From the NCBI GenBank assembly GCA_964270895.1, contig OZ185443.1: a stretch of 64,000 bases of DNA. The stretch is one strand, 5' to 3'. The translations under genes were made by a program, and so were the position numbers. Of the stretch, positions 1 through 59,327 are shown piece by piece. Source of the stretch: Podarcis filfolensis. Taxonomy: Eukaryota. The stretch's first letter is position 1, and every line of letters starts with the position of its first letter. Under the pieces are notes generated by a model. That model saw only the letters and a list, made by a program, of their open reading frames with translations. It did not search any database and had not been told where the DNA came from.

Positions 1-351
1 CTTTCAGTGGGGAAAGCTTTTGCTTTTATATTTTCGTATTTCCACCCAGCCTCTCAAAAATATTTTACCCATCTCTTGTGGTTTCTTCTTCCATTTTCTC
101 TTCCATGGCCATGTACATTCACTTTTTTGTCCTGTTTCTTCTGATATCCCCCCTTTTCCATTCCCGGTTTGTCTGTTGTTGATTATGTTATATATTAGCC
201 TTTTACCTCTCTAATTTCCTTCAACATCTCCTCAGTTCCTTTTCCCTTAGCGGAGGGAGACATTTCCCTCCTCTCAACTGCCAACCTCTCTGTCTCCCCG
301 GCCCCATTGTCTCAGCATGGAAGGAGTTATGGGTGCTGGCATGAGTATATT
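1..351. repeat. Third (partial) copy of the local duplicated unit also found at ~6890-7250 and ~9320-9665
   Basis: Near-identical text in three places, e.g. CCCCCTTTTCCATTCCCGGTTTGTCTGTTGTTGATTATGTTATATATTAGCCTTTTACCTC. Ends at GGGTGCTGGCATG(A/G)GTATATT, where it fuses to the RAPGEF2 duplicate. Confidence 0.9.
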
Positions 352-1559
352 TTTCCCAAGTAGTTTATAATATTGCAACTGAAGCTAAGTTTAAGCCACT
401 AAAGAATGAATTTTAAAAGATCTTGGGGGTTTTAATCTCAGTTCAAAATGACACCTGCATTTGCAGCATCACAAACGTATGTTCTTGTATACAATTTTGT
501 GAAGTAAAACTAAAAGTGCATTATATTATTTTATATTATATTTAGCAACTGACAAATGCAGTCACTCATAAACAAAAACACTGAGATTATGCACCATAAA
601 ATTGTAGGTCTTTTCTGAACTGCAATGTTCAAGCAGTATTTGTGAGTTGAAGAATCATCAAAAGATTATGGTAGCAGTGGTATGGCTTTCCTGTCTTATC
701 AAAAGTGTTCTCAGATCTATTACAACATTGCTTTCCAAACACTGTTGGAGTAACAGACACTTCTATAAACAAGGACCATTTTTAGTGCAAAGATGTGGCT
801 ATGATGATCAGTAAGTGTTTGTTACTGCCAGATGGAAGTATTGTAATGAGTAATACAGTAAAGTCTATTCAGAAACTGCAGCTGTAAAATGCTGTGAGTC
901 ATTCCCTTAGTATACTAGCAAAAGAAGCATGTTATTACCAGAGGTTTAGAAGAGACATAACCAGCTCATTTGGGTGCACTGGTGATATTGATTATAAAAG
1001 CCCTCTGTTGTCTGAAACATAGATATCTGACTTTCAGCCTTGCTTTCCATAGTTAGTTGAAATGGTCAAGAAAAATGTCTGAATTCAATGATCCTAACAT
1101 TAAATGTTTTAGAGCTGCAAACAATTTTTTACAGAGGCCACCAACTGTCAAATCTACTTTTCTCTCTCAGATGCCCTAATCTTACTGCCCTTTACAAGAA
1201 GTATTAGTTTCCCTTTTCATTAATTATTTTTATCTGGAGTACTGTAGCCTGGTGCATCACAGCTACATTTCCACCTACTCTGAAATTTAAGTGCAGATTA
1301 GGATATATTTGAGGTCTGCTGGGGATTGCTTTCCTTCAAGTGGCTTCCCTGTAAGACTGAGATGGAATAGTTGACATGATTGCACTTGTAGGTGTGTGCA
1401 CCACTTTATATCTTAATACAGGGTGATTAATAATGAAATATACCGTTTCAACACACCATAAAAAAGAAGAATGTAATATATATTACCTGTAACAGAATTG
1501 CAGGGGAATGTTTAAAGTTTTTTTAGAAACAGTCACAGATGTTCTATATGTGCACCTAT

Positions 1560-1868
1560 TGTCACACATCGAACCGGTAATCCTTATCTGCTGAAACATG
1601 ACTCACCCTACGTGCTGATTTTCCCGGGCTTCGTTGAATGATGGTGCAAACACTACTGGCTTCTTCCGATACACACGGTTGTCCAGGACTTCTAAGTTTG
1701 CACAATCAGCCTGTAGTTTCACATTTTTTATGCCAATTGTAGATACATTTTCTGCTTGGAGGTTTTTCCCCCGAATCACAACCAAAAATGCCATCACACA
1801 ACAGTTACAGATTCCATTTTGCTCAATTCAAGAACACGAAACACCTTCTCCACTGCAGACGCAGCCAT
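1560..1868 (-). pseudogene. Degraded N-terminal (HTH DNA-binding) part of a Tc1/mariner transposase
   Basis: MAASAVEKVFRVLELSKMESVTVV*...(frameshift)GEKPPSRKCIYNWHKKCETTG*LCKLRSPGQPCVSEE...IQRSPGKSARRVS resembles the recalled N-terminus of DD37D/DD41D-like transposases (WxxxFxxTG...SPGRP...RSPxKS). Contains stops and a frameshift and lies inside the TIR element. Confidence 0.75.
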
Positions 1869-1947
1869 TTTGCCTGACTAGTCACATGAATCGCATGCTA
1901 TCGCCTATGTCACTTCCCTCAGTAGTGGAACACAAACTTTATGAGTA

Positions 1948-2189
1948 CACTGGTACCTCGGGTTAACAACTTAATTCGTTCTGGAGGTCTGTTCTTAACC
2001 TGAAACTGTTCTTAACCTGAGGTACCACTTTAGCTAATGGGGCCTCCCGCTGCCGCTGCGCCACCGCGGCGCGATTTCTGTTCTCATCCTGAAGCAAAGT
2101 TCTTAACCTGAGGTACTATTTCTGGGTTAGCGGAGTCTGTAACCTGAAGCGTATGTAACCTGAAGCGTCTGTAACCCGAGGTACCACTG
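1948..2189. mobile_element. Tc1/mariner (Tigger-like) MITE nested in the 1419-2285 element
   Basis: TIRs CA(C/G)TGGTACCTCGGGTTA / TAACCCGAGGTACCACTG; TA flanks at 1946-47 and 2190-91; internal AACCTGAAG repeats; second copy at 5606-5818. Confidence 0.88.
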
Positions 2190-3130
2190 TACATCTACCT
2201 CACGGTTCGCAGTTATGATCCGTGTCGTTGCCTGTTACTGTCTTACAGCATCTGGAAACTGTATACTTCATTATGAATCACCCTGTATATTAAACCTTTG
2301 CCCAACTAATTTGTAAAGATCCCTCTACCTGAACTGCACATTTCCTCTCAACAAATTCAACTAAGGAAAATCTAAGCTCTAGTAAACATCTTACATAAGG
2401 TTGCAACCTGAAACTTAATGCCAAAATAAAAAAGGCAAGGCAGTAATCTATTCTCTGGTTCAAAATTCCAATCTGGCAAAACACTGAAAAGGCTATCAAA
2501 GCTTGGAATATGACTTTTTCACCATACAGAATAATTGCGAAGGAAATTTTTCATTCTAAGTTCATGATCTGTATTGCCATGAACATCCCCATACTAAAAT
2601 GTTGAATTACAAATCCACTAAACACAACAAGCATTTTTTGTTCCTTCTCTACTCCCCCAAGATCTATGTAACAGCAATTCTGACAGGTTGAGTTCTTTCT
2701 GCTCTGGTACATTCGATTTCCTGAATGCCTCTCCCATCTCCAACACAGTCCAAAGTAGCAAGAAAACTATTGAGACTTTACATTTTCTGAAGTTTCAAGT
2801 ATGAATTGTGGCTTAAGATTATAGCCCAACTTTCTTTAAAGCCCTCAAGGGAGCATTATACGTTAATGTTAAATAAATAGAGTACATAAAACTGATTCAA
2901 AAAGAAACACCACTAAAGAAAAATGCCTAGCAGTGTATACTAGAAGTGATTTTAATGTGCTTGTACCATTTTACTTGGTTGTAAACTGCCTGGTATGTAT
3001 CTTTTTATGACAGGTGGTATATAAATGGTTTACAATAGATAAAACAATAATACTTGTATACAATAATCAACAAATATCATACAATATAGTTACTTCATTT
3101 CTCCTGTCTATAAATAAGCAATACTTTGTA

Positions 3131-3602
3131 TTGTTGTTGTTGTTGTTTAGTCATTTAGTCGTGTCTGACTCTTTGTGACCCCATGGACCAGAGTACGCCA
3201 GGCACTCCTGTCTTCCACTGCCTCCCGCAGTTTGGTCAGACTCATGTTTGTAGCTTCGAGAACACTGTCCAACCATCTCGTCCTCTGTCGTCCCCTTCTT
3301 CTTGTGCCCTCCATCTTTCCCAACATCAGGATCTGTTCCAGGGAGTCTTCTCTTCTCATGAGGTGGCCAAAGTATTGGAGCCTCAGCTTCACGATCTGTC
3401 CTTCCAGTGAGCACTCAGGGCTGATTTCCTTAAGAATGGATACGTTTGATCTTCTTGCAATCCATGGGACTCTCAAGAGTCTCCTCCAGCACCATAATTC
3501 AAAAGCATCAATTCTTCGGCGATCAGCCTTCTTTATGGTCCAGCTCTCACTTCCATACATCACTACTGGGAAAACCATGGCTTTAACTATACGGACCTTT
3601 GT
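3131..3602 (-). mobile_element. 5'-truncated BovB (RTE clade) LINE
   Basis: Uninterrupted RTE C-terminal ORF (KVRIVKAMVFPVVMYGSESWTIKK...WCWRRLLRVPW...LRLQYFGHLMRR...HGVTKSQTRLND*), (CAA)n tail, target duplication ATACTTTGTA, empty site near 35632. Confidence 0.95.
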
Positions 3603-4009
3603 ATACTTTGTATACTTTGTATACTGTTCACTAATACTGAATGTGAAGCTTATTGACCGCATGTGTCTCCTTGTCAGTCTCTTAACTCCACATTTGGAGA
3701 AAATAATTTTCCTGTCTTATTACCTACACCCCAAGAGATATTTATCCAGAAATTCTACCTTGAATTGTTCTACTTAGTTTTGGCTGCTTCTCAACTATTT
3801 TCAGGTTCCAGGGACAACTACATCCATTTCCATTACCCCAGCCCTTTTAACATTGATTTGCATGCCCCCACTATCTGCACAGTGACAATGATAAATAACT
3901 GCTAACTAATAATAATGGTACAAATTTATTGCAAAGTATTTCAGTAGATCAGACTATTTATGTGTCCTAAAAAGAAGAAAAACAGAGTATTTCTCTGTGA
4001 ATTTTCTCA

Positions 4010-5463: not shown

Positions 5464-5608
5464 GGGGACGCGGGTGGCGCTGTGGGTTAAAGCACAGAGC
5501 CTAGAGCTTGCCGATCAGAAGGTCGGCGGATCGAATCCCCGTGACGGGGTGAGCTCCCGATGCTCGGTCCCTGCTCCTGCCAACCTAGCAGTTCAAAAGC
5601 ACATCAAA
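5464..5608 (+). mobile_element. Squam1/Sauria SINE, 5' half
   Basis: GGGGACGCGGGTGGCGCTGTGG...GATCAGAAGGTCGGCGGATCGAATCCCCG...AGCAGTTCAAAAGCACATCAAA matches the recalled lacertid Squam1 head and the copy at 40524. Confidence 0.88.
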
Positions 5609-5818
5609 CTGTTCTTAACCTGAAGCACCTGAAACTGTTCTTAACCTGAAGCACCACTTTAGCTAATGGGGCCTCCTGCTGCTGCCACGCCGCCGGAGCA
5701 CGATTTCTGTTCTCATCCTGAAGTAAAGTTCTTAACCTAAGGTACTATTTCTGGGTTAGCGGAGTCTGTAACCTGAAGGGTATGTAACCTGAAGCGTCTG
5801 TAACCCGAGGTACCACTG
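5606..5818. mobile_element. Second copy of the Tigger-like MITE lacking its left TIR
   Basis: Collinear with 1990-2189; right TIR TAACCCGAGGTACCACTG plus TA. Confidence 0.88.
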
Positions 5819-5888: not shown

Positions 5889-5943
5889 CAGATTTGTAGA
5901 GTTGGAAGGGACCCTAAGGGTCATCTAGTCCAACCCCCTGCAA
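5889..5943 (-). mobile_element. CR1-type LINE 3' tail fragment
   Basis: GTAGAGTTGGAAGGGACCCTAAGGGTCATCTAGTCCAACCCCCTG, the reverse complement of a typical reptile CR1 3' end; similar fragment at 39678. Confidence 0.7.
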
Positions 5944-6454
5944 TAAAGCAATCTCTACTAAAGCATCGGATTTTTGTATCAGATACGTATTTTACCACAT
6001 AGACCTTGAGAAGCAACAGAAAAATCTGAACAGACAGATGGCAAAGTGTGCTAATTCCACCACATAAGCCCATCTGAAAACATCAGAAAGCTGTGCTTTT
6101 AAATATAGACTGTCAGCATTCCAGCTTTACATAAATATACAACACAGAGAAAAAGGTTGTGTATGTTTTTCTGTATATCACAGCATAACCAATATGAAAG
6201 TTAGCTGAAGCTCAGTCCATTTTTTATAAAGCAAGTTTCCAGGAAGGTACACCTTCAGTTTACTTCCTCCCTCTCCAAAATGGATGACCATAGGCTTGGC
6301 AGTCTGTCATAGCTGCTGCTTTTGTGATATATTCTAGCTTCCCTTTCACCTTCTAAATAAAGGGATGGCTTTGCAGCAAGCCAGCTTCCCGATTCATTCA
6401 CACACTCTTCTAGGCATACTGCTAGGAGACAGTGTCCTAAAGTGACTAAGGCTG

Positions 6455-7935
6455 CAGCCCTATTCCTTCCTAACAGGGAGAAAGCTCCATTATACACACT
6501 GGGACTTACTTCTGAGTATACATGTACAGGATATATGAAAGGTTTTATACTTCACCAGTTGGATTAAAAGGAGCATATAGTATTATTTAGGATTAACTAG
6601 ATCATAAATTATTAAACTGCTTATCCCCAGGCCCACTAAGATGGCTGAACATGACTAAGACCCACCAGTCACAAAATGGTGGTGCAGGGGCAGAAGAAGT
6701 TACAAAATGGTGGCAAGTCAGACTTTGGCACAAGGAGCTGGCAATCACTTGCATGATGTCCTACTGATATCAAATCAATCTTTGGAAATGGCTATTTTTT
6801 ACCTCAGCATTTTCCTTGCAGCAAGGAATCCACTACGTCAGTTTTCCTCGTGCTAAATACAGGCACTTTTTCTGGTGGCATTGGGAAAGCAGATCCAGCT
6901 TTAAGTGCGGAAAGCTTTTGCTTTTATATTTACATATTTCCACCAAGTCTCTCAAAAATATTTTACCCATCTCTTGTGGTTTCTTCTCCCATTTTCTCTT
7001 CCATGGCCATGTACATTCACTTTCTTGTCCTGTTTCTTCTGATATCCCCCCTTTTCCATTCCCGGTTTGTCTGTTGTTGATTATGTTATATATTAGCCTT
7101 TTACCTCACTTTCTAACTTCCTTCAACATCTCAGTTTCTTTTCACTTAGCAGAGGAAGACATTTTCCTCCTCTCCCCTGCCAACTTTGTTTTCCCTGCCC
7201 CGTTATCTCAGCATGCAAGGAGTTTTGGGTGCTGGCATGGGTATATTGAACACATTTAGTGAAGGATTTTGTTTTAAAATAAGCTTCTGTATCATGTATT
7301 TGTACATTAACAGATATTTTAGGCTATATATTTTCTGGTGGGAGTGTTTTCTTGCAGGAGGGGAGCTGACAGGAAAAAAATAAAAATCACCTTTAAGGAC
7401 AATCAAAGATGAAGGAGAAGAATGTTTGGAGGGGCTTTTGACTTTGCAGCAGAGGGATGGGAGGGGGGACGGTTGTGGGGAAAGCATCCATGTTGAAAGA
7501 ATAGTAACTCTGGCCAGAGAATAAGAGATTACATTTACTGCTGGAATATCATCTTGACTGTGAGTCCTGCAAGCCCTGCTCCCTGCCTTCTTCCAACTGT
7601 CCTGGGAATGACTGCAGGTAGAAATGATGAGGCTGCTGAACAGACTCTGGGTGGGGGCATTGCTTAGGGATTTTTTGCAGAGGGGGTGTTATTGTTGCTG
7701 TTATTGATATTAATTTGTGTAGCTTTATTTTGCAGCTTTATTATGATTTATGTGGAAATTGTTCAGTTTGGTTGTGTACTTTTTGATGTTTTGATTATCC
7801 CTTCTGACTACTTTTGCTGTATTTTGAATTGTGCATTTCTTTGCATGGCATAAGCCACCTGAAGCATGGCTATAACTGGAAAGGTGGCATGCAAATAAAA
7901 TGATGTATGTATGTATGTATGTATGTATGTATGTT
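6455..7935. repeat. Local tandem duplication, copy A
   Basis: Collinear with 7955-11315, from CTGCAGCCCTATTCCTTCCTAACAGGGAG to the (TATG)n end. Confidence 0.9.
7905..7932. repeat. (TATG)n microsatellite at the copy A/B junction
   Basis: TGTATGTATGTATGTATGTATGTATGT. Confidence 0.9.
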
Positions 7936-8328
7936 TACTGCTTGGAAACCTATTCCTGCAGCCCTATTCCTTCCTAACAGGGAGAAAATTCTATTATACA
8001 CATTGGGACTTACCGTACTTCTAATTATATATGTACAGGATTGTGCTGTAATGTTAAAAGAAATACAACTGACTGTATTACATTATAAATCCACCCTTCC
8101 TACAAGGATGATGAATGGGTGACAATATTTACAGAAGCAATATATAAACTGTGCTGATCTCTGTAAACAAAAAACAAAAAATACACGTAATAAATACACT
8201 ACATAATTTATCTCAGTAATCCTCAAATTCTGTAGCACAGAACATCTTTAGTACATATAACTGATAACTCTATGTCCACTTTGGCAAAACAAAAAACAAA
8301 AATACCACAACCAAAGCATAAACAAACC

Positions 8329-8464
8329 CATGGACAGGGAACTGCAGTTCTTCCAGATGTTTCTGGACTACAACTCATATCATCCCTGCTCATTGGCCAT
8401 GATGGCTGCGACACGTGAGCGTTGAAGTTCATCAGCATTTTGAGGGCCACAGATCCCCCATTCC
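8329..8464. mobile_element. Common lizard palindromic hAT-type MITE (degenerate)
   Basis: CCAGATGTTTCTGGACTACAACTCATATCATCCCTG...CAGCATTTTGAGGGCCACAGATCCCCCA matches a recalled abundant squamate MITE. Confidence 0.55.
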
Positions 8465-9710
8465 TACTTTAAATTGTTAAAGTAAGAACTTGGCTGTAGA
8501 AGAATTCCCACCACCGCTACCCCCCATAGAAAGATTTAAGGAGATTGCTGGATTTTGACCGTAATAAATTTGTGCAGCCTTTGCAGTTAGAATATCAAAG
8601 TGAAGCACTGCTGTCAAGCACACAATTTCTCATTGGCAGGCTGCAGTGTGTGTATTGATTCAGTCCACCTAACTCCATGCTTTTAAGATACTGACACACT
8701 TCATCTGAAAAGGTGTATTTCACAGCCGAAGGAAAGTGACCTTCATGAACAGTATTTTAAAAACTATAAGGATGCAACTTCAGAAGTGTGCATTCATATG
8801 TTGTTCACGCGCGCACACATATATCTATATTATACATATATGTTATTATCATGCTATTATTACAGAATCAGAAGCAAACTTTGGTTATCGGATGGTACAT
8901 GGAAGTATAATGTATACAGAGTAGGAATTAAAATAAACACAATGTGTAAACTGGTAAAAATATATGAATGAAGCTTTTATGCTTCACTATTTGGATTAAA
9001 AGGAGCAGATAGTATTATTTAGGACTAACTAGAACATAAATTATTAAACTGTTTGCTCCCAGGGCCCACTAAGATGGCTGACAATGACTGAGGCCCAGCC
9101 GTCACAAAATGGTGGTGCAGGGGCAGAAGTTACAAAATGGTGGCAAGGCAGAGTTTGGCACAAGGAGCTGGCAATCTCTTGCATGATTTTCTACTGGTAT
9201 CAAATCAATCTTTGGAAATGGCTATTTTTTTACCTCAGCATTTTCCTTGCAGCAAGGAATCCACCACATCAGTTTTCTTCGTGCTAAATAGTGGCACTTT
9301 TTCTGGTGGCATTGGGAAAGCAGATCCAGCTTTAAGTGGGGAAAGCATTTGCTTTTATATTTCCGTATTTCCACCCAGTCTCTCAAAAATATTTTACGCA
9401 TCTCTTGTGGTTTTTTCTCCCATGGCCAAGTACATTCACTTTTTTGTCCTGTTTCTTCTGATATCCCCCCTTTTCCATTCCCGGTTTGTCTGTTGTTGAT
9501 TATGTTATATATTAGCCTTTTACCTCACTTTCTAACTTCCTTCAACATCTCAGTTTCTTTTCCCTTAGCAGAGGAAGACATTTTCCTCCTCTCGCCTGCC
9601 AACTTTGTTTTCCCTGCCCTGTTATCTCAGCATGCAAGGAGTTTTGGGTGCTGGCATGGGTATATTGAACACATTTAGTGAAGGATTTCATTTAAAAACA
9701 AGCTTTTGTA

Positions 9711-10308
9711 CAGGGTGGATAAAAATCAATGATTTAAATTTTAAAAGATCAGATTTTTTATTTAAATCGGATTTTTTAAAATTTAAATCGGATTTTTAAA
9801 ATAAAATGCTTTTGGAGGAAAAATCTTTCTAAAGATATTTTTCTGTTTAAGTTACAGCATAGTCCAAAGGCTATACTGGAAATACGGATTTGTTTTAAGT
9901 TTTTCATGTGTGCTAAAACTCAGTCTAGGTTTGTTTATTTTTTAAGCTCAACCACATCAGTTAACAAACATGGATACATATGCTATAATATTATTGATTT
10001 AGTTAAATAAATTGTTTAAATTGTTATTAAGGAAACGATTATTTTTCTCCTTCCAATAAAGTACAAATATAAAGTTATTAAACCTCACAATAATTTCATA
10101 ATTATCTGTCTATGTATTTCTAATAGTATAACTCAGTGACTTTTTTATATAAGTGTAAAAACTAATCTGAAAATTTATTATTCCAGAAATGAAACCTTCA
10201 TCTGGTTGTAAATATTAAGATTAAACCACCAAGAATGAGTCTTTCTGTAAAAAAAGTGTGATGTAAATCAAGTCTTACTGACTAGTAATTTAAATCAAAT
10301 CCACCCTG
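9711..10308. mobile_element. hAT-superfamily non-autonomous element
   Basis: TIRs CAGGGTGGAT / ATCCACCCTG; 8-bp TSD CTTTTGTA / CCTTTGTA; single site CTTCTGTA in copy A near 7283. Confidence 0.88.
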
Positions 10309-10615
10309 CCTTTGTATCATGTATTTGTACATTAACAGATATTTCAGGCTATATATTTTCTAGTGGGAGTGTTTTGCTGCAGGAGGGGACTTGACAGGAA
10401 AAAAATTAAAAGCACCTTTAAGGACAATCAAAGATGAGGGAGAAGAATGTTTGGAGGGGATTTTGACCATTGCAGCAGAGGGATGGGGGGGGGGGAGAAA
10501 GCACCCATATTGAAAGAGTAGTTATTCCGGCCAGAGAATAAGGGATTACATTTACTGCTGGAATATCATTTTGACTGTGAGTCGTGGAAGGCCTGCTCCC
10601 TGCCTCCCTGCCTTC

Positions 10616-10901
10616 CTTTCTTTCTTTTTTTAAATAAACATTTTTATTCGATTTTCCAATACATTTATTTTTAAAAAATTCATATACATATTCATATACA
10701 GAGATTCCTCCAAATCTCAGGACTAACCCCCCCACCCCTCCCTGGATCCCCATTTTAAACATTTTAAACTGCATCTTCTTCCAGACTCTAGTATATCAAT
10801 CGATATTTCCCATGGTCATTTTTACACTACAAGTGAAATAAAAATCCTGCCAATGTTTCCATCTGCTTACAGTGGTTTTTATGTAAACATTTTTATTTGA
10901 T
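10616..10901 (-). mobile_element. 5'-truncated L1-like 3' end
   Basis: Flanked by the 12-bp direct repeat CTCCCTGCCTTC (10604-10615, 10902-10913); A-rich tail with AATAAA on the minus strand; absent from copy A. Confidence 0.6.
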
Positions 10902-10980
10902 CTCCCTGCCTTCTTCCAACTGTTGGGGGGGGGCACTGTCTAATGATGAGGCTGCTGAACAGACTCTGGGTGGGGGCATT

Positions 10981-11047
10981 GTTAGCTGCCCTGAGCCCAA
11001 CTTCAGCTGGGGAGGGCCGAATATAAATAAAAGTTTATTTATTTATT
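10981..11047 (+). mobile_element. L2-type 3' tail fragment
   Basis: GCCCTGAGCCCAACTTCAGCTGGGGAGGGCCGAATATAAATAAAAGTTTATT resembles the reverse complement of the L2 tail at 23460-23510; absent from copy A. Confidence 0.7.
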
Positions 11048-12028
11048 ATTGCTTAGGGGTTTTTGCTGAGGGGGTGTTATTGTTGCTGTTATTGATATTA
11101 ATTTGTGCAGTTTTCTTTTGTACCTTTATTATGATTTATGTGGAAATTGTTTGGTTTGGTTTGGTACTTTTTGATGTTTTATTTATCCCTTATGACTACT
11201 TTTGCTGTATTTTGAATTGTGCATTTCTTTTCATGGTGTAAGCCACCTGGAGCATGGCTATTAACCGTGGAACGGTGGCATGCAAGTAAAATGATGTACG
11301 TATGTATGTTTACACTGGCGACTCACAGTAATCCTCTCAAAGTCAAGTTTTAATTAAATGGTAATTCTGTATCTTGGCTTTATCAGCACGGGTGTGTGTG
11401 TCATATGGTATAATGCTTCTTCATTTTTTTTTAATTGGTTCACATAGAAAATTGCCATGTCAGGAAGAAGACTAGGTTTTAACAACTGTATTTCCCTGGC
11501 ACCTGCTTTTCTATTTACAGGGATTTCCATTATTACTGACGAGCACTCAGACATCTGAACCCCCACCTGAAATAGTACTGCTCAGATACAGTTTTATTGA
11601 GAATGGGGCTTAAGTGGCTTTGCAAATCTGTCAACATTGACTGTGAATTGTTGGAAACATAGTTAGGAAAGAAAGGAGCACCAAGCTGAGAAAAGGCAAC
11701 AAAAGGGTTGAAGGCTGCATTCTTCTAGAGTTGGTTTTAAAACAAACATGATGCCAAGGAGCTGAGTCTTAATTAATTAGCATCATTTAGTGAACATTAG
11801 CGTAGCTGTCGTTATATAAGGCCAGGGCTTTACAAGTCTTGGTGAAATGTCATTGTATAAGCTAAAGATCTGCTGGTGTCGCTATACTAGCTCAGGACAG
11901 CCTCTAGTAGTGGCACAGAGACTAGCAAGCACAGCTGCACATGCAGTTCTCTCCCATATATATGAATAGCAAAGCCTAAGAAAACATCCAAGACAGGACA
12001 AAACAATACGGAGATCATTAACATTATA

Positions 12029-12034
12029 TTTATT
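12029..12034 (-). terminator. RAPGEF2: Polyadenylation signal AATAAA of RAPGEF2
   Basis: TTTATT on plus, at the end of the conserved-looking UTR block. Confidence 0.75.
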
Positions 12035-12238: not shown

Positions 12239-12310
12239 CACTTGACATCACAGAGTGAACTGAGATTAGCAGTCCTATGGTCTACAATTACTTAATGCCT
12301 ATATAACATT

Positions 12311-12317
12311 TGTGCAA
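12311..12317 (-). promoter_or_regulatory. miR-19 7mer-A1 seed match (TTGCACA)
   Basis: TGTGCAA on plus, within the 3'UTR. Confidence 0.5.
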
Positions 12318-12675
12318 CTTGTGATACAGCTAGGTTTGTTCTGTCTTGCTATATGCACATGTGGTCCATACCCTATATAATGAAACTGGCAAATGCATAT
12401 TACATGTAAAATTACAAATGTATAATTGACAATGTGATATATGAGCAAATAAGACAAAAGCCATGAATACAGGAGAAAGAGAATAATTAAATAAAGCACT
12501 GACATAATTCAATACAGTGAAAAAACACTGCAATTTGATCTTTAGAAGTTGAAGTTATTTACGTTTATCTACTGATCAATATGATCAGCTGAGTTCAATG
12601 AAAAAAAATTCCAAGACCAGCAGTTCCTCACATCTGAGTACTGCTCAGATTGGCAGCCTTCACTTTTCCGGAGTC

Positions 12676-12683
12676 TGTGCAAA
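12676..12683 (-). promoter_or_regulatory. miR-19 8mer seed match (TTTGCACA)
   Basis: TGTGCAAA on plus, in a conserved-looking UTR block; Rapgef2 is a reported miR-19 target in mouse neurogenesis. Confidence 0.6.
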
Positions 12684-13559
12684 ACCAACACAAAAACAGA
12701 AAGTAGGGGGTGTCATTTCATTTCAGTCACTCAAGGATTAATAGCAGCTGTGAGCATGTGATTGCTACCCGATTGGCCTTCTCTATACATGCAGTGTTCC
12801 ATAAAAGTAATCCACAGTTGTGAATGTTTTTGCACTGCTAAGGCTGGTAGATCTTCAGAGATTGCTCCTCTTTATAAAAAGGTATCACTTCCTAATGCAA
12901 AGCCAATAAAAAGAGCCTATTACATCACTATTAAGGGTTGGCATTAGTTGCAGTGTCCTGCATTGCCTTAACTGTAGTATTATCCTCATAATTTGTGTGT
13001 GACAACTGTTAGTGTATTACAAGGATGATAAAAAGGAAAAAAATATTTGAAGTAAAAGATGGAATTGCCATTTGTCAAAGTGCGACAAATGTTTTTATTC
13101 ACCATTCTGTATTCCTCAAGGCACAGGAAAGGGATGCAAAATGGATTTGCATCTATTAAAATGCAAGACTAATTGTCCTGCATCAATATAGATGCAAATT
13201 AGCAATACCAGCAATTCCAAAACTGATCAACTGTGCTCCAAGTGTGGAACACTAAAAATGAAGGTTGAAGGTCAATGAAAGGCCGAATCCTCCCTATAGA
13301 CCACCCTTACTTAGATACACTATAGCTTTTTAAAAACCGCTTCTTAAAAAGTACAAAATAATACTGAAATTATGCAAGTGTAACTCCCCCCCTCCGAATA
13401 CAACATTTAGAGTAGCAACAAAGGCATTGTAAACAAGCAAACAAGCACTGTGTACTTGAAGGAATTCAACATGTTTCTCTTAGTAGGGTAAAGGCCAAAT
13501 GTAGCTTGTCAACTAGTTGATTTCATTATCCCAACGAGGTGAAGTGCACGGATTGTGAT

Positions 13560-14745
13560 CAGCGGCAGGGCATGACCCGGTGGTGCCTGGGGTGGGTGGG
13601 AGCGTGCCACACAATGGCAAAAGGGCACGCTGTGGGGTGGGGTATGCCATCGGAATGACTGCGTCCTTCTCGGCCGTCCTTCCTCGGATCTTAATCACAA
13701 TCAGAGGCGTAGAGTGAGGGGTGCTGGGGGGGCGTCGCCCCAGGTGCAATCTTGTGAGGGGGGTGCTGGGTGCCAGAGCTGCTGCATCCTTCTCAGCTGG
13801 AGGGCAATAACTTCACAGTATTTCACATGCAGGGGAGAGATGTGGCAGCTTCATGCACCAGCCTCACACTGCTTTTGTGGGGATTGTGGGACCTGTAGGG
13901 CGCTCAAGCCACTGCGTCCCCCTCAGCCACCCTTTGGCTAGAGGGCACCCAGAAGAGATGTGGCAGCTTGGGTACCCTGCAAAAGCAGCGAGAAGCCGCA
14001 AAAGTAGTGTGGAGCCGGCGCATGGAGCCGCCACATCTCTCCCTTGCATGTGAAATACTGTGAAGAAATTGTCCTGGCACTTTTCAAACTGTGTTGCTTG
14101 AAATGCACAGTGCAGCGTTTTCCCCAGCTACCGCTGTTGCCGTCTTCCACATCACAGTATCATTCATATTACAGCTGTATGAGAGGACTAAAAAATTCTA
14201 AATAGGCCAAGGCTTTACAACCGAGCGAGGGTATCTCTTCTCCATCATTGAACCAGCCAGAAATACATGTCAGCATTTTTCTTAGTTGGGAATCAAAAAC
14301 GTGTACTTCCAACATCTACACATCACAATGAATAACTGACTGTACTTCCCCAATGCCTGGAAGCATTTAAAACCTTCCTCAGATCTTAATCACGATTACA
14401 GGCATAGGTTGGGGTGTGCTGGGGGGGACATCGACCCGAGTGCAGTCTTGGGAGGGGGGCACAGGGTGCCAGAGCTGCTGAATCCTTCACAGTTGGAGAG
14501 ATGCAGCAGTGCCGTGTGCCGGCCCCACACTGCTTTTGAGGGCAGCGCAGGACCTGCAGGGTGCCCAAGCCACCACATCTCTTCTGGGCGCCCTTTAGCT
14601 GGAGGGTGGCTGAGGGGAACACTGAGGGTCCCATGTTGCCTGCAAAAGCAGCACGGGGCCAGCGCATAAAGCCGCCACACTCCTCTGGCTGAGAAGGAAG
14701 CAGCAGCTCCGGTGCCCTCAGCAGCCCCCACCCCACTATACCTCT
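13560..14745. mobile_element. Composite hAT-like insertion in the 3'UTR: MITE copies plus inverted host DNA
   Basis: Starts CAGCGGC and ends CTATACCTCTG; candidate 8-bp TSD ATTGTGAT (13552-59) / AATGTGAT (14747-54). Palindromic MITE at ~14395-14745, second rearranged copy at ~13702-14040, inverted host copy at 14041-14393. Confidence 0.75.
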
Positions 14746-15131
14746 GAATGTGATTAAGATCTGAGGAAGGTTTTAAAAAATGCTTCCAGGCATTTGAGAA
14801 GTGCAGTCAGTTATTCATTGTGATGCGTAGATGTTGGAAGTTAGAATGATACTGTGATGTGGCAGACAGCAACAGTGGTAGCTGGGAAACTGCTGCAATG
14901 TGCATTTCAAGCAACACGGTTTGAAAAGAGCCAGGGCAATTTCTTCACAGTATTTCACATGCAAGGGAAGAAGAGTGCGGGAGGAAGGGGGAGAAGCCCC
15001 ATGCTGCTTTAAGGCAGGGAAGGAGGCAAACAGGTCCACCATCCTTTAGAGTTCCAAGGCTCCTATACTAGGGGCGTCGTCTTGTGCTCTCCTTTAAGTT
15101 GGCTCACGCAGGATCCAGAAAGCCCCAGTTC

Positions 15132-15157
15132 TTAGACGGCAGAGACTTGCTCATCTT
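15132..15157 (-). CDS. RAPGEF2: RAPGEF2 terminal coding exon: (E)DEQVSAV*
   Basis: Acceptor TGTTTGCAG, phase 1 entry, TAA at 15132-34; C-terminal S-A-V class I PDZ ligand. Confidence 0.96.
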
Positions 15158-16666
15158 CTGCAAACACAACAGGATAGGAGGTAAATACATCTTAAGGTAT
15201 TTAGAACTAAAATAGCCAATGTATTTATATGTTAGGCTTGTTCACTTGAAACACTAAACCCATAGTGTAGCATGCACATTCACTCCCCATGCCCTCTCCT
15301 GTGCAGCCAGGATCAGGACTTTGGAAAAGAAGGTAAATACTAGCCATGAATTCTCGCTAGTTGGTACATAGGAATCAGATATTAGAGTTTAACTAACCAA
15401 TTTATGTTTTGAAACAAGCCAGCTTCATAACCTATGGTTTTAAAGTTGGTCTGTTTAGAACAGGGCTGGCAAACCTGTGGCACACTGACTAATCTTGACC
15501 CACAAGGCCATTTCGCACACCCACTTGTCCATCAGTTAGTATCACTGATTGAAACCAGCTGCTTATTACAAGGACAAAGTACCTCCCTCTGTTATCTGTT
15601 TCAGCAGCATGTTCACCTGGTGAGCAGAGAGTTATAGGATCTGGCTGGTAACAGGCATACACAGCCAAAGCCCTGCAGTACACTTTAAACCACTGGTTGG
15701 GTTGTTTGCAAAAGGGCTTTCAAATATCCCTTGATGGTGCTTTGAAGTCCCAAAAGTGCAGGCTTCAAAGCACAATGCTACCTGATGCCCCTATGACATC
15801 AGGTGATTGACAAGTGGACAGCACTACTCACATGTCAAATTACAACCTCCAGAGGTGGGGAGATAAGGATTTGGTTTACCAGTCAGAAAAATGTCCCCAG
15901 CCCACTTTAGAAACTAACCAGAGTCTGTTTTAAGCTCCAATCTCTAGCTGATCAGTAATAAGTCAGGTTTCTTTAACACTGGAAGTAAATACTAGCAAAA
16001 GCCTTCTCAGGCTGTCCAGCAGAAGCTGAAGGGATGAAGCAAGAGCCTTTGTTTGAGTTTGTGTACATAGTGCTAAACCACAATTTTACTTTTGCATGTG
16101 AACCAGCTCACTGTGTTTACATCTCTCTCAAGTAAATACTGAACCTTATGTTTCTTTCAGCATGGCTCTTCCATTTACCCTTTAGATTAAAATACCATTT
16201 GGCTGCTTTGCCATCTCCACTTTAATTTTACCAAATCAGACTGTTTTTAACATTCAACTCAGTAAAGTTCTAATGTTTACACCTTTGCTACAAACATTAC
16301 ATGGCCCTGCACTTGACTCAATATTAAGTTAAAATCCTGAGAGCATTGATGTGCTGCAGAGGAAGTGCAAACTTTACAGCTTTTTAGTCTACAAAGTATT
16401 TGAAGACCTCTTCGATTTTACAGCCCATAGAAAATCCTCCCTCTCAGAACCAAGATATACACCACATAAAACAATCAATAAATGATTGGATGAGCTGATA
16501 GCACTTCCGTCATATGAACAAGAAACAAAGTCAGAAACACTTCTGAGCTCAGAGCTGGATAAAAGTACACGCCCTCTCTTGCACCTGCATAAATGTTCTG
16601 GATGCAAAAGAACTTATGGAAACAAACCCTTAACTTATTATTTTCAAAATGTTATAAGATGTTTAC

Positions 16667-16972
16667 CATCCTCCTCTGTGGAAAACCCTTGAGACTGATA
16701 GTGAACCAGATGTGGGTCTGACTCATTTGGTTTGTGCCACTGAGGTTTGCCCACAGGCCTGCTAGATGGAGGACCCTGTGGTTGCTGCTGTGAAGCTGAA
16801 GTCCCAGGGGCTTCACTTGACCGTGCCACCATCCTAGACCTCTGAAGTGCCACGTTGTAATCCGGAGGTTTTCGGGCTGGGTGGGAAACTCCTTCAGCAA
16901 AGTCAGCAATAGGTATTCCTACATAACCAGGCGGGGTTGGTGGTGGTTCACGATAGCGGCCCTCTTTTCGAG
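16667..16972 (-). CDS. RAPGEF2: RAPGEF2 exon: (A)[16 protein letters not shown]...PPDY...GFSTEED
   Basis: 306 nt, AG/GT, phase 1-1; two PY motifs. Confidence 0.97.
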
Positions 16973-17291
16973 CTGCAGTAAAATAGTGCATCATCAGCAA
17001 TCATAATCATTTACATATATTTGTTACAACTACTATCTATGCCTGTACTTAGTTCTATTATGTCATAATCCTGGTAGCTCTGATGTGCTTCCAAGGGAGT
17101 TGAACAACTTGGCATTAAAAACAACCACAGTATGGACATGAGGCAGCCCAAAAGTAAAGGCATTTACATTTCACTGAGTCCAAATGGGAGTTGAGCACAT
17201 TCTTAAAACTTTCCCATTCAAATCAATGGAATCTAAAACTGCTTAATTCTGGCTGGATTATACAGGCACATCCATACCAAATACCTATACA

Positions 17292-23439: not shown

Positions 23440-23884
23440 TAATAATAATAATAATAAATTTTATTTATATCCCGCCCTCCCCAGCCGAAGCCGGGCTCAG
23501 GGCGGCTAACAACAATCAAATAATCAAACAATCAAATAATCAAACATTCTAAAAATATTTCATTATAAAAATTAATTAAAATCAAGTTGATGGCAACCAT
23601 TAAACAAAATTCTGTGCAGGTTGCCAGAGGAGGGAGTCACGCTGCGCCCTGACCAAAGGCCTGGTGGAACAACTCTGTCTTGCAGGCCCTGCGGAAAGAT
23701 GTCAGGTCCCGCAGGGCCCTAGTCTCTTGTGACAGAGCGTTCCACCAGATTGGAGCCACAGCCGAGAAGGCCCTGGCTCTAGTTGAGGCCAGCCTAACCT
23801 CTCTGAGGCCTGGGACCTTCAGGATGTTTTTATTTGCAGACCGTAGGTTTCTCTGTGGGGCATACCAGGAGAGGCGGTCCCGTA
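23440..23884 (-). mobile_element. 5'-truncated L2-clade LINE 3' end
   Basis: Minus strand reads RDRLSWYAPQRNLRSANKNILKVPG...RAFSAVAPIWWNALS...FRRACKTELFHQAF, then a GGGCGGGATATAAAT tail and (TTA)n. Confidence 0.88.
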
Positions 23885-24734: not shown

Positions 24735-25195
24735 CTTTAAATAAAAAGTAGAATTAAGATTACAGTTAAGACTACCTCAAGAGTACTTGATTTTATATTA
24801 AACGGTGTCCGGAAGAATGATCAATGATGGAAAAGAGATATCCTCTCTCGGTTGAAAAACCTTGGAATTTGTTAGTCCTCTCATTCAGCTATAATATACT
24901 ACCACAAACTATAGTAAAATGATGCCCTGATCAGCAGTTGGAGAGCCAATTAGGTAATGTATGCCATTTAAGAAACAAGTACCACATATGCCAACTGTAA
25001 TATTGTCTACAATTTGCAATGGCATGGAATAACTTGTTTTCTAGTGATCAGCTTGATTAGAAACACATACTTCTCTCAATGATGCTGTGGCCAAGCCTAA
25101 GCCTGAGGGACAGTTAAGCTGTAGGCTAAATAAAGATAAATTAACAGCTCATTTGCCATGACTGAGGTGCACACCCAATTAAGAAAAATGCTCAC

Positions 25196-25419
25196 ATGTA
25201 TTGCTGGCTGGTTCACATTGTAGAGAGAGTGCCTGAAGGCTCTCTTCATCCATTTCCAGATCCAAATTGGAGAGATACTGCTTGACTTTCCGAGCCATCT
25301 GAGCATCTTCATATAGCTTTTTGGCATTGAGGAAGGAGCTGCGGCGGACCCGCTTTTTATGTCCACCTGTTTGTGCAACATCAAGGACTGCTGCATTTGT
25401 ACTGCCTTGACTGAGAGAC
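25196..25419 (-). CDS. RAPGEF2: RAPGEF2 exon: (G)[16 protein letters not shown]...[18 protein letters not shown]...EPASNT
   Basis: 224 nt, AG/GT, phase 2-1. Confidence 0.97.
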
Positions 25420-29235: not shown

Positions 29236-29447
29236 CTTCATGGAGGAACGTAAGGTCCTTTTTGATTACAGGGAACAATGGAATAATAGGAGGCTGTAGA
29301 TTTTGGCTATTCAGGACATTGCGATATTTTGCCATGTTCCTAGATGGATCAAATAAATCCTGAAGATCTTGAAACAATTTTTCATATTTGCTTGGAAGTT
29401 TTTCCCAAGTAGTTCGTAGTCTTGCAACTGGAGCTAAGTTTAGGCCA
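29236..29447 (-). CDS. RAPGEF2: RAPGEF2 exon (CDC25): (S)[17 protein letters not shown]...[19 protein letters not shown]
   Basis: 212 nt, AG/GT, phase 2-1. Confidence 0.97.
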
Positions 29448-32322
29448 CTAAAGAATGAATTTTAAAAGATGTTGGGGGTTTTAATCTCTATTCAAAATGA
29501 CACCTGCATTTGCAGCATCACAAACATATGTTCCTGTATACAATCTTCTGAAGTAAAACTAAATGCATATCATATCATATTTAGCAACGGACAAATGTAG
29601 ACACTGGTAAACAAAAACACTGCTTTCAGAGATTATGCACCATAAAATTGTAGGTCTTTTCTGAACTGCAATGTTCAAGCAGTATTTGTGAGTTGAAGAA
29701 TCATCAAAAGATTATGGTAGCAGTGGTATTTCCTGTCTTACCAAAAGTGTTCTCTGATCTATTACAACATTGCTTTCCAAACACTGTTGGAGCAACAGAC
29801 ACTTCTATAAACAAGGACCATTTTTAGTGCAAAGATGTGGCTATGATGATCAGTAAGTGTTTGTTACTGCCAGATGGAAGTATTGTAATGAGTAATACAG
29901 TAAAGTCTATTCAGAAACTGCAGCTGTAAAATGCTGTGAGTCATTCCCTTAGTATACTAGCAAAAGAAGCATGTTATTACCAGAGGTTTAGAAGAGACAT
30001 AACCAGCTCATTTGGATGCACTGGTGATATTGATTATAAAAGCCCTCTGTTGTCCGAGACATAGATATCTGACATTCAGCCTTGCTTTCCATAGTCAGTT
30101 GAAATGGTCAACAAAAATGTCTGAATTCAGTGATCCTAACGTTAAATGTTTTAGAGCTGCAAACAATTTTTTACAGAGGCCACCAACTGTCAAATCTACT
30201 TTCCTCTCTCAGATGCCCTAATCTTGCTGCCCTTCACAACAAGTATTAGTTTCACTTTTCATTAATTATTTTTATCTGGAGCACTGGTGCCTGAGATTAT
30301 TGACCACCTTTGATCCCCAAATCAAGTTTCATCAAGTATATTAGCAGAATAAGTTACAGTAATTTAACACAGAGGCATGAAATTTAACAAGGCATGAAAG
30401 TGACCAGTCTCAAATGCAGGCAGACAATGTAACTTATTTTACTTAATTTGAGTTGGTTAAAAGAATTCCTGGCTTGGAACTCTATCAATAATGCCCCCAA
30501 ATCACAGTGTTCCATGCCCAGGCTTTTCTAAATTGATGCTAAATATAACTTTCCGAAATCACTGTCACCCATAGTGAAAAGGCAAAGGAGCATCAGCACT
30601 GTGAGAAAAGTGGGCATCCTGAGTGTACTGATTAAAAATCCCTATCTTGCCTATGTTCACGTATCAGACTACAGGAAGGTTTAGTAGAAATGGCATGAAG
30701 TTGTGGAGTGAGGAGTGCTTGAGAGAGGTATTCGGTCTGTGAGGGGGATTCTGTCAGGAGGGTTCGTTCAGACAAGTGGTAGAGCTGAGGAGAGCCAAGA
30801 ACTCTCAGTATATGCTCTAAGGTTCTGAATTGCAGAACACTGTTAAAATAGAAAAGGCACAGTCTCCCACGGTGTTTACAGGAAAAAGGGTCCTCAGAAG
30901 GAATACTCTGACATGAAAGGGCAGTAGTGATTCCCAGGCCAAAGAGGATTTGGGGGTCTGTAAGGAAACAGTCCAGTTAAAATGCTAAATTCCTGAAGTG
31001 TGTGTGGAAAAGTCTGATCTATGAAAGATGTGTAAAAGAAAGTAACCTTAAGCCTGAACAGCATACAGCCTATAACTTGAAACAGTATACGTTTTAATAA
31101 AAAGCAACAGCACTGTGCCATGAATAATCTCACTGTTTGATATATTTCTGTGGAAGAAAAAGAACCAAAAACTCCTTGTTTACATCTGTTATAATAAAGT
31201 TTGTTTGCAACCTGTTTTCCCCAAAGAAAAACCCACTGTCGCTCGTGATTCATTCTCTATTGGGGGAATTCACCTGAGGGAAGGGAAACTGAGGGCTGGC
31301 ACAGCGGTGCCAGGGAGGGAAGAGTGCTGTTGCGTTGTCCCAGAAGTCCCTCCACATCGCCTGCTAGTTTCAAATGGTAATATGTCAAGACCAATGCTAT
31401 CAATACTTGCTGAGATTGCTAATAAATGCAACAAAGCAAAGGTTTCCTTACCATGGAAGCCTTCAAGTACAGTCTAGGGATTGTAATTGCATTCAAAAGC
31501 CGAATAGCAGGCTCACATGAGGCCTAAACAACAACCAAATGTGCTTCATACAAAGTGACAATCTGTTTTGAAACGACCCTTTCAAAAGGAAGGTAACCGG
31601 AAAATTCAGAAGTGTACTTTTTGTGGGGGTAGGAAGGAGGAGAACCAAAGATTTAAGGCTGCCTTGTCTAACAATTAGCTTCTACTGCATTAAGTTAAAA
31701 ACCTGTGTAACCTATAACTGGGATTTTGAATGCCAACATGCAAACCTTTTAAATGATACTAAATGAACTGGATTCATACAGGACTGTGTGCAGTCTTTCA
31801 CACATAAAACATACTCCATGGTTGCATACTAAGTGGAAACAGAGATAGATAAATGACTTCTTTTGTAATTTTGCTTTTTCCAAGTCTGTTCCAAAGGATA
31901 TTTTGATTTCTAGAGATAACAAATGCTTATAAAAATGACAAACACAACAAAGACTAATACATTTATAATGACACACGTGATCATGGAGTAGAGTCTACTT
32001 TCATCAGATATATCATTATGATGTTAGCAATGACAAGCTTGCAATGCTAATTTAAACAGCTTTTCATGGAAGAATCCTCTAGCCTTTCAACCAGTCTTGC
32101 TCTTTTTGGATTAGGATTTTGTCTAAAGCTGCTGCTGAGGACTGTTAAGTTAATGAAATATTACTATTGTAGTATTAAATTACTAATTCATAAAACAGTA
32201 AAATGTACACATAGTATCTTTCTTAAAATTTAGTATCATCATTATGAAGCATCTATTTACACTTTATTTCTTATAAATTGTATGCAAAATCATTGGGGGG
32301 GGGGTGATCTAGTCTTGTTTAC

Positions 32323-32706: not shown

Positions 32707-32861
32707 CTGGGAGAGGGGGGAAGAGGGAATAAAGTTTTCTAGAAATGAAAACACTAATAGTAATGGAAAGCAAAGGTAGCTTGCTTAGAATTTAAAAATC
32801 AGTATATTTAAGAAGTACATTCAATTATATTCTGAAATGGCAGATGATGTACGAGTCTCAC

Positions 32862-59322: not shown

Positions 59323-59324
59323 GT

Positions 59325-59327
59325 ACA

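What the first reader, a model, noticed from the sequence alone, without database searches (positions are those of the whole stretch)
14166..14290. Templated fragments of RAPGEF2 from ~10 kb away stitched inside the UTR insertion
14166-14251 is the reverse complement of intronic 24821-24897 (with a 9-nt insert). 14250-14290 is the reverse complement of 25174-25214 (38/41 identical), which spans the exon end and 5' splice site at 25196. The two pieces are joined by GA microhomology in shuffled order and embedded in the inverted UTR copy. This multi-template mosaic is the pattern expected from replication template switching (FoSTeS/MMBIR) or Pol-theta templated insertion. In the transcript these pieces are antisense to the gene's own pre-mRNA, including a splice donor.
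Basis: partly seen in the sequence, partly recalled or inferred. Interest (0 to 1): 0.8.

Follow-up and report, generated by a model that had tools for sequence, protein, structure and literature searches.

The report
Repair patch copied from RAPGEF2 itself
A 139-base patch in the tail (3'UTR) of a lizard's RAPGEF2 gene was copied, back to front and in shuffled order, from an exon end and an intron of the same gene about 10.5 kb away; it is an old scar of error-prone DNA repair, a known kind of mutation, and probably has no function.

Summary
Window 14166-14251 is the reverse complement of intron 24821-24897 (69/77 identical, plus 9 extra bases). Window 14249-14290 is the reverse complement of 25174-25216 (39/42), which spans the exon end and 5' splice site. 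The pieces share TGA at their joint and lie in permuted order. Another 14 bases (14291-14304) have no source in the window.

The 139-nt patch interrupts the left arm of a palindrome. The right arm is native 3'UTR and shows the empty site (only TA is replaced). Another squamate's contig (L002) has a continuous UTR. So 13560-14746 is a lineage-specific insertion. It is bounded by an 8-bp duplication (ATCACAAT/ATCACATT) and CAG...CTG ends, which looks like a hAT-type element that later gained inverted copies of its own flank.

Patch-to-donor divergence (K2P about 0.08-0.11) matches arm-to-arm divergence (about 0.07). The event is therefore old and is not an assembly artefact.

Best reading: filler DNA laid down by template-switching repair synthesis. 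I cannot separate MMBIR-like synthesis from a pre-joined 395-bp circle or tandem duplicate, from an RNA template, or from Pol theta. In the transcript the patch is antisense to a splice donor, but nothing indicates function. It is a new example of a known kind and of modest interest.

The parts
14166..14251 (+). Patch piece A: inverted copy of RAPGEF2 intron 24821-24897, with 9 extra bases at about 14198-14206
   Evidence: blastn E 6e-15; 69/77 identical outside the 9-nt gap; K2P 0.112 +/- 0.041
14249..14290 (+). Patch piece B: inverted copy of 25174-25216 (last 21 nt of the exon plus first 22 nt of the intron, including the 5' splice site). It overlaps piece A by TGA (14249-14251)
   Evidence: 39/42 identical; blastn E 2e-9; K2P 0.075 +/- 0.044
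14291..14304 (+). 14 orphan bases (AATCAAAAACGTGT) between piece B and the resumed inverted UTR copy
   Evidence: No k-mer of 10 nt or more, and no match with 3 or fewer mismatches, elsewhere in the window
24821..24897 (-). Donor of piece A, inside the intron about 300-375 nt downstream of the exon's 5' splice site
   Evidence: single copy in the window
25174..25216 (-). Donor of piece B: end of coding exon 25196-25419 plus 5' splice site GTGAGC
   Evidence: the exon aligns to another vertebrate's contig L005 at 83% while the intron does not
14028..14165 (+). Left-arm segment q: inverted copy of native UTR 14844-14980
   Evidence: 90-93% identity; K2P 0.076
14305..14395 (+). Left-arm segment p: inverted copy of native UTR 14748-14841 including the target-site copy
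   Evidence: 94% complementary; K2P 0.069
14747..14980 (-). Native 3'UTR (right arm), with the empty site of the patch at 14842-14843 (TA)
   Evidence: Aligns to outgroup contig L002:2776-3256 at 80%. The left arm equals the right arm apart from the 139-nt patch replacing TA
13560..14746 (.). 1,187-bp lineage-specific insertion in the 3'UTR that hosts the patch. It has G-rich foreign sequence, inverted copies of the upstream UTR flank, CAG...CTG ends, and 8-bp direct repeats at 13552-13559 and 14747-14754
   Evidence: L002 joins window 14746 directly to 13559. L002 has no G-rich element and no A/B. The interior has no source in the window
15132..15134 (-). RAPGEF2 stop codon (...EDEQVSAV*); the 3'UTR runs from 15131 towards lower coordinates
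   Evidence: There is no AATAAA/ATTAAA on the minus strand between 15131 and 13100. UTR conservation with L002 continues to about 11945

Best explanation
The patch is filler DNA left by error-prone repair of a break in the germline of a lacertid ancestor. First a foreign, G-rich, hairpin-forming element inserted into the RAPGEF2 3'UTR. It has hAT-like ends and an 8-bp target-site duplication. It then acquired an inverted copy of about 230 nt of the UTR just upstream, so a palindrome formed. Either during that synthesis or at a later break between segments p and q, a free 3' end was extended on DNA of the same gene 10.5-11 kb away. It copied 77 nt of intron, let go, and re-primed 395 nt further back at a TGA microhomology (inside a looser 13-column similarity). 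It then copied 42 nt across the exon end and splice donor. It picked up 14 bases of unknown origin and was joined back with loss of only 1-2 bases. What is shown: the donors, the orientation, the permuted order, the joints, the empty site, the absence from an outgroup, and the age. What is inferred: the break, the order of copying, and the polymerase pathway (MMBIR/SDSA-like template switching). The patch is most likely neutral.
For: Both donor matches are far above chance. The patch interrupts an otherwise colinear inverted copy of the UTR, and only TA is missing at the site. The native arm and the outgroup L002 both lack anything at that site, so this is an insertion into the left arm and not a deletion from the right. 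There is no target-site duplication, poly(A) tail or terminal repeats around the patch. TGA is shared at the A|B joint. Because the patch lies inside a copy of the local flank, it must have been acquired in situ. The host insertion is itself a mosaic of about 10 junctions in 1.2 kb, with three copies of the flank+TSD+element-end junction, so template switching evidently happened here repeatedly. Patch/donor divergence (0.075-0.112) equals arm/arm divergence (0.069-0.076) within error. Substitutions polarised by L002 fall on both arms. Together these indicate an old, real, neutrally evolving structure. Multi-template insertions with 2-12 bp microhomology or 'microhomeology' are the described MMBIR signature (PMC8421209).
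Against: The q|A junction has no microhomology, and the two right-hand junctions cannot be scored because the 14 nt are orphan. The donors lie 10.5-11 kb away, whereas described MMBIR templated insertions are usually copied from within about 100 bp (PMC8421209). Returning to within 2 nt of the departure point fits a simple break plus patch better than an ongoing replication excursion. A pre-joined circular or tandem template explains the permuted order with fewer steps. No relative closer than L002 could be retrieved for this stretch, so the order of events is untested.
Confidence: 0.5

Rival explanations
1. One contiguous template with a pre-formed A|B joint. A 395-bp circular DNA (microDNA-type), or a transient or polymorphic tandem duplication of 24821-25216 closed at the TGA direct repeat, or a rearranged paralogous copy outside the window, was copied or inserted once at the break. 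The shuffled order then needs no second template switch.
For: A and B have the same orientation and lie 277 nt apart in the donor. Read across a circle junction they form one continuous 119-nt stretch. TGA occurs as a direct repeat at both ends of the 395-bp unit. According to a review (PMC8414719), DNA flanking about 80% of microDNA circles has 2-15-bp direct repeats. The 200-400 bp microDNA size range is from my own knowledge. Other RAPGEF2-derived duplicates of the same age exist nearby (350-4001 vs 29399-36066, K2P 0.05-0.09).
Against: No circle, tandem duplicate or second copy of the 24.8-25.2 kb region is present in the window. The direct duplicate ends at 350 against an unrelated repeat rather than continuing towards that region. 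The 14 orphan bases and the 9 extra bases still need extra steps.
Confidence: 0.2
2. RNA-templated patch. Unspliced RAPGEF2 pre-mRNA, possibly the nascent transcript tethered near the 3' end of the gene, was reverse-transcribed at the break, as in class 2 templated sequence insertions.
For: Both donors lie in the transcription unit that contains the break, upstream of it. The patch has the class 2 features: no TSD, no poly(A), a microdeletion, and non-templated bases at a junction (PMC5110952). LINE reverse transcriptase is available in this genome (BovB/RTE-like fragment at 3147-3662).
Against: Piece B crosses an unspliced exon-intron boundary and A is intronic, so there is no splicing signature to prove an RNA origin. 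The permuted order still needs a jump on the RNA. DNA templates explain the same data.
Confidence: 0.12
3. Polymerase theta-mediated end joining alone produced the templated insertion.
For: Templated, sometimes multi-step insertions with short microhomology are the hallmark of this pathway (PMC5068794 and PMC4032859, listed). The A|B joint shares 3 nt.
Against: From established knowledge, such inserts are typically a few to a few tens of nucleotides copied from sequence flanking the break. Here the pieces are 86 and 42 nt, copied from 10.5-11 kb away, and one junction has no microhomology.
Confidence: 0.08
4. Gene fragments were captured by a transposon elsewhere and carried in (as in Pack-type or Ds-like elements), or the patch is itself a small transposon.
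For: The host insertion has hAT-like ends and an 8-bp duplication. Ds-like hAT elements of maize carry filler DNA that is occasionally matched to gene fragments (PMC3260210).
Against: The patch interrupts a copy of the local UTR flank, which can only have been made at this locus, so capture happened in situ. The patch has no TSD or terminal repeats. Donor A is single-copy in the window.
Confidence: 0.04
5. Assembly artefact (a chimeric or fold-back read).
For: Palindromes are a known artefact of some long-read libraries (own knowledge). No independent contig of the same species covering the site could be retrieved.
Against: The arms differ by about 7% and the patch differs from its donors by about 9%, with changes on both arms when polarised by an outgroup. 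Artefacts would give near-identical copies.
Confidence: 0.02

Closest known systems
MMBIR/FoSTeS templated insertions (MMB-TI; Osia et al. 2021, PMC8421209)
   Same: The insert is copied from intact donors, uses more than one template, is in inverted orientation, has a short microhomology or 'microhomeology' at a switch point, and returns to the original sequence.
   Different: The donors are 10.5-11 kb away rather than within about 100 bp. One junction has no microhomology. 14 nt are untemplated or of unknown source. This is a fixed, old germline event in a lizard, not a somatic or cancer event.
Class 2 templated sequence insertion polymorphisms (Onozawa & Aplan, PMC5110952)
   Same: A patch from a distant transcribed region fills a break. 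There is no TSD or poly(A), and there is a microdeletion and non-templated bases at the joints.
   Different: Here two pieces of one gene are joined in permuted order and the donor is the host gene itself. An RNA origin cannot be shown.
Filler DNA in hAT (Ac/Ds-like) non-autonomous elements and abortive gap repair (PMC3260210; gap-repair model from own knowledge)
   Same: Foreign filler, occasionally from genes, lies inside an element with 8-bp TSDs. The host element is internally rearranged.
   Different: The filler sits in an inverted copy of the element's own flank. hAT family membership of the host element is unproven, because no other copies were available.
Polymerase theta templated insertions (PMC5068794, PMC4032859)
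   Same: Templated filler with microhomology at a repair joint.
   Different: The length and the donor distance are well outside the usual range.
Reintegrated microDNA / small eccDNA (review PMC8414719)
   Same: The inferred 395-bp unit is bounded by a short direct repeat, and the permuted order equals a circle junction.
   Different: There is no evidence that a circle existed, and only 119 of the 395 bp are present.

Membership tests
MMBIR/FoSTeS templated insertion | Inserted sequence is copied from another locus that stays intact | tested here: met
   Donors 24821-24897 and 25174-25216 are intact within the gene
MMBIR/FoSTeS templated insertion | Two or more template switches in one insert | tested here: met
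   There are at least three segments (A, B, 14-nt orphan) in permuted order
MMBIR/FoSTeS templated insertion | Microhomology at the junctions | tested here: inconclusive
   3 nt (TGA) at A|B, 0 nt at q|A, and the other two junctions cannot be scored
MMBIR/FoSTeS templated insertion | Template close to the insertion (about 100 bp in the yeast and MMBSearch definition) | tested here: not met
   The donors are 10.5-11 kb away (PMC8421209)
Pol theta (TMEJ) templated insertion | Short insert copied from sequence flanking the break | tested here: not met
   139 nt in pieces of 86 and 42 nt from about 10.5 kb away. The typical range is from own knowledge.
Pol theta (TMEJ) templated insertion | Dependence on POLQ | not testable with these tools
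   Needs genetics
Class 2 templated sequence insertion | No TSD, no poly(A) or poly(A) signal; NHEJ-type joints (microdeletion, microhomology, non-templated bases) | tested here: met
   Only TA is lost, there is no direct repeat, and there are 14 orphan bases (criteria from PMC5110952)
Class 2 templated sequence insertion | RNA intermediate | not testable with these tools
   The donors are unspliced pre-mRNA or DNA, so there is no diagnostic spliced joint
hAT-type non-autonomous element (host insertion 13560-14746) | 8-bp target-site duplication with an empty site in a relative | tested here: met
   ATCACAAT / ATCACATT flank the insertion, and L002 has a single ATCCCAAT
hAT-type non-autonomous element (host insertion 13560-14746) | Target preference nTnnnnAn | tested here: met
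   ATCACAAT fits (consensus from PMC10368747)
hAT-type non-autonomous element (host insertion 13560-14746) | Short terminal inverted repeats | tested here: inconclusive
   The outer ends are CAGAGG... and ...CCGCTG, with only about 8/16 matching
hAT-type non-autonomous element (host insertion 13560-14746) | Multiple copies in the genome | not testable with these tools
   No other copy is in the window. ORF-based searches were blank, which is weak evidence
microDNA/eccDNA-derived insert | Circle of about 200-400 bp bounded by a short direct repeat in the source | tested here: inconclusive
   The geometry fits (a 395-bp unit with a TGA repeat), but existence of a circle cannot be tested

The most novel reading that the evidence does not exclude
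The antisense patch, exposed as a 139-nt bulge in a giant 3'UTR hairpin, pairs in cis or in trans with RAPGEF2 pre-mRNA at the 5' splice site of exon 25196-25419 (42-nt duplex, -61 kcal/mol) and at the downstream intron (-104 kcal/mol). This would modulate splicing of a frame-shifting exon or recruit ADAR or RNAi, giving this lizard lineage a self-targeting autoregulatory loop.
Probability: 0.03. Interest if true: 0.6.

Novelty: new member of a known kind. Interest (0 to 1): 0.3.

Why it matters
This is a clean natural example of a multi-piece templated repair patch fixed in a vertebrate germline. Both donors, the empty site (in the paralogous arm and in an outgroup) and the age are all readable in one 64-kb window. 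It shows that a hairpin-forming insertion in a conserved 3'UTR can become a local hotspot for template switching, and that the host gene's own exon and intron can serve as filler. It does not reveal a new mechanism, and nothing suggests that it changes RAPGEF2 function. Its value is as a well-documented case for surveys of templated insertions and fold-back rearrangements in non-mammalian genomes.

Tried and rejected
1. I looked for a better or contiguous source in the window. blastn at word sizes 7 and 11, over the whole window and between the downstream region and the gene body, found none.

2. I looked for a source of the 14 orphan bases and of the 9 extra bases in piece A. k-mer and 3-mismatch searches found none.

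3. I tested whether other small gene-body matches downstream are further templated patches. They are not. 10979-11050 vs 23441-23512 is a SINE tail inserted in one copy of a local duplicate. 5478-5611 and 5890-5952 are a tRNA-derived SINE head and a common repeat.

4. I tried to retrieve the UTR of closer relatives or independent contigs of the same species through ORF handles. Eight exact look-ups (plus P0001 contigs that stop short at 15579) and two homologue searches failed. Only L002 reaches the site.

5. I looked for an outgroup for donor A. The representative search gave L005, which aligns only in the exon.

6. Rfam and tRNA scans of 12300-15300 found nothing.

7. The idea that the palindrome is one long-TIR transposon is rejected. 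The right arm and the supposed 'TIR' CCTTCCTCAGATCTTAATCAC are native UTR and are present in L002.

8. Assembly artefact is rejected on divergence.

9. A possible 7-nt extension of piece B after a 9-10-nt gap (GTGTAC vs GTGCAC) is too weak to claim.

Full report
**Setting**

The window carries the 3' two-thirds of RAPGEF2 on the minus strand.
- The penultimate coding exon (16647-17000) matches proteins named Rap guanine nucleotide exchange factor 2.
- The last coding exon ends ...EDEQVSAV with stop codon 15132-15134, so the 3'UTR runs from 15131 towards lower coordinates.
- Earlier notes of this scan call the genome a lacertid lizard. A BovB/RTE-like reverse-transcriptase fragment and Sauria-type SINE pieces fit a squamate.
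- No AATAAA or ATTAAA occurs on the minus strand between 15131 and 13100.
- UTR similarity to another squamate continues to about 11945. The stretch in question is therefore, by inference, inside the mature 3'UTR.

**Observation**

- blastn with word size 7 finds 14166-14251 against 24897-24821 (minus, E 6e-15) and 14239-14290 against 25226-25174 (minus, E 2e-9).
- Local alignment gives piece A as 69/77 identical plus 9 extra bases, and piece B as 39/42 over 14249-14290 against 25216-25174. The two pieces share TGA.
- The real patch scores 74 bits; the best of 100 shuffles scores 32.6.
- Donor B covers the last 21 nt of coding exon 25196-25419 and the first 22 nt of the intron, including GTGAGC. 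Donor A lies about 300-375 nt further into the same intron.
- In gene order B precedes A, but in the patch A precedes B. The order is therefore permuted, and simple deletion within an inverted copy cannot explain it.
- The foreign stretch extends to 14304. Its last 14 bases have no source in the window, and neither do the 9 extra bases in A.

**Context of the patch**

- The left flank (14028-14165) and the right flank (14305-14395) are inverted copies of 14844-14980 and 14748-14841, at about 93% identity.
- Aligned to the reverse complement of the right arm, the left arm is colinear except that 139 nt replace TA at 14842-14843.
- There is no target-site duplication, terminal repeat or poly(A) around the patch.
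- As RNA the region is predicted to fold into a very long hairpin (-577 kcal/mol, z -28.6), with the patch as a bulge.

**Outgroup**

- A 5.8-kb Logan contig from another squamate (L002) was found through the penultimate exon. It aligns to window 15230-14746 and then directly to 13559-12239.
- L002 has one copy of the arm sequence, no G-rich element and nothing resembling A or B.
- Hence the right arm is native UTR, and 13560-14746 is an insertion in the window's lineage.
- The patch is an insertion into the left arm, not a deletion from the right, because L002 reads straight through the site.
- The UTR is alignable at 77-80%, while the last intron is not alignable at all. The UTR is therefore constrained.

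**Nature of the host insertion**

- It is bounded by an 8-bp direct repeat, ATCACATT upstream and ATCACAAT downstream in transcript sense. L002 has a single ATCCCAAT.
- It has CAG...CTG ends.
- Eight-bp duplications and the nTnnnnAn target pattern are hAT hallmarks (PMC10368747; PMC3260210).
- The terminal inverted repeats are weak, and no other copy could be found, so family membership is open.
- The interior is a mosaic with two kinds of content. One is G-rich foreign sequence in direct and inverted partial copies (65-83% alike). The other is copied native sequence: three copies of the junction 'native flank + target site + element end' (at 14770 reverse, 13678 and 14373), a direct copy of 14933-14968 at 13801-13836, and the inverted arms p and q.
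- In the central palindrome, identity is near 100% in the native-derived part and drops to about 78% exactly where the foreign sequence starts.
- I read this as an imperfectly palindromic element onto which an inverted copy of its upstream flank was later added by fold-back (snap-back) synthesis. This step is inference.
- An unverified note of this scan reports a similar 'MITE carrying an inverted copy of its own flank' elsewhere in the genome.

**Age**

| Comparison | K2P distance |
|---|---|
| q/Q | 0.076 |
| p/P | 0.069 |
| A/donor | 0.112 |
| B/donor | 0.075 |
| Direct duplicate 350-4001 vs 29399-36066 | 0.047-0.086 |

- All of these lie within error of each other.
- Contigs of the closest relatives found (L003, L004) differ from the window by only 3% but stop at 15579.
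- Polarised by L002, substitutions fall on both arms.
- The structures are therefore old and evolve roughly neutrally, and they cannot be assembly artefacts.
- The patch may date from the same episode as the inverted duplication, but this is not shown.

**Mechanism**

- The patch interrupts a copy of the local flank, so it was acquired in situ. Capture elsewhere by a transposon is excluded.
- The features point to templated filler laid down during break repair: intact donors, inverted orientation, several segments, a 3-nt microhomology inside a looser similarity, a 1-2-nt loss at the site, orphan bases, and no TSD or poly(A).
- This matches the MMBIR-type signature (PMC8421209) and the class 2 templated sequence insertions (PMC5110952).
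- It fits Pol theta poorly because of the piece lengths and the donor distance.
- Three points limit the claim: one junction has no microhomology, the donors are far away, and the return to within 2 nt of the departure point looks like a simple break plus patch.
- A rival that I cannot exclude needs only one template. This would be a 395-bp circle or tandem duplicate of 24821-25216 closed at the TGA direct repeat. Read across its joint it gives A then B contiguously (direct repeats at microDNA borders, PMC8414719).
- An RNA template (unspliced nascent pre-mRNA of the same gene) is also possible and leaves no distinguishing mark.

**Function**

- In the transcript the patch is antisense to the exon end and splice donor, and to the intron piece. 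Predicted duplexes are -60.8 and -104.1 kcal/mol, against about -12 and -23 for shuffles.
- The exon is 224 nt long, so skipping it would shift the frame.
- The UTR is transcribed about 10.5 kb after that splice site. By general knowledge of co-transcriptional splicing, this leaves little opportunity for action in cis.
- No conservation or expression data could be obtained. I treat a regulatory role as unlikely (about 3%).

**Verdict**

This is a new example of a known kind of mutation, of modest interest.

Noticed in passing
window 13552-13559 and 14747-14754; 13560-14746: The 1,187-bp UTR insertion is flanked by an 8-bp direct repeat (ATTGTGAT / AATGTGAT on the plus strand) fitting the hAT target pattern, and it has CAG...CTG ends. 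Its interior holds three copies of the junction 'native flank + target site + element end'.
   Followed up: partly
window 12239-15131 vs L002:2776-4872: The RAPGEF2 3'UTR is alignable at 77-80% between two squamates, while the last intron is not alignable at all. Conservation stops near 11945, close to an AATAAA at 12029-12034 (minus strand), which is a likely poly(A) site.
   Followed up: partly
window 10979-11050 and 23441-23512: This inverted 72-nt match looked like a second templated patch but is a SINE 3' tail (…GCCGCCCTGAGCCC…ATATAAATAAA…). It is inserted in one copy (10308-11309) of a local duplicate whose other copy (7283-7918) shows the empty site.
   Followed up: yes
window 350-4001 vs 29399-36066: This is a direct partial duplicate of RAPGEF2 introns that skips 30294-34604 (including exon 32319-32687), with a 4-nt overlap at the joint (1248-1251). 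It is interrupted by a BovB/RTE-like reverse-transcriptase fragment (3147-3662). It is in the same age class as the patch (K2P 0.05-0.09).
   Followed up: partly
window 6452-7918 vs 7956-11309; 1-375: A local segmental duplication of about 1.5 kb units at 88-91% identity lies downstream of the gene. The first 375 nt of the window belong to the same repeat.
   Followed up: no
window 45749-46102: A 20-bp minisatellite with 17.7 copies at 88% identity (consensus unit CGCTGATATCGCACACCCAA) lies in a RAPGEF2 intron.
   Followed up: no
window 43572-44178 and 59031-59325: Further imperfect palindromes (61-70% complementary) lie in introns. They show no detectable similarity to the G-rich element in the UTR.
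   Followed up: no
window 5478-5611 / 40524-40657: tRNA-derived Sauria-type SINE heads occur in both places, and a second common repeat occurs at 5890-5952 / 39687-39749. These are dispersed repeats, not gene-derived pieces.
   Followed up: partly
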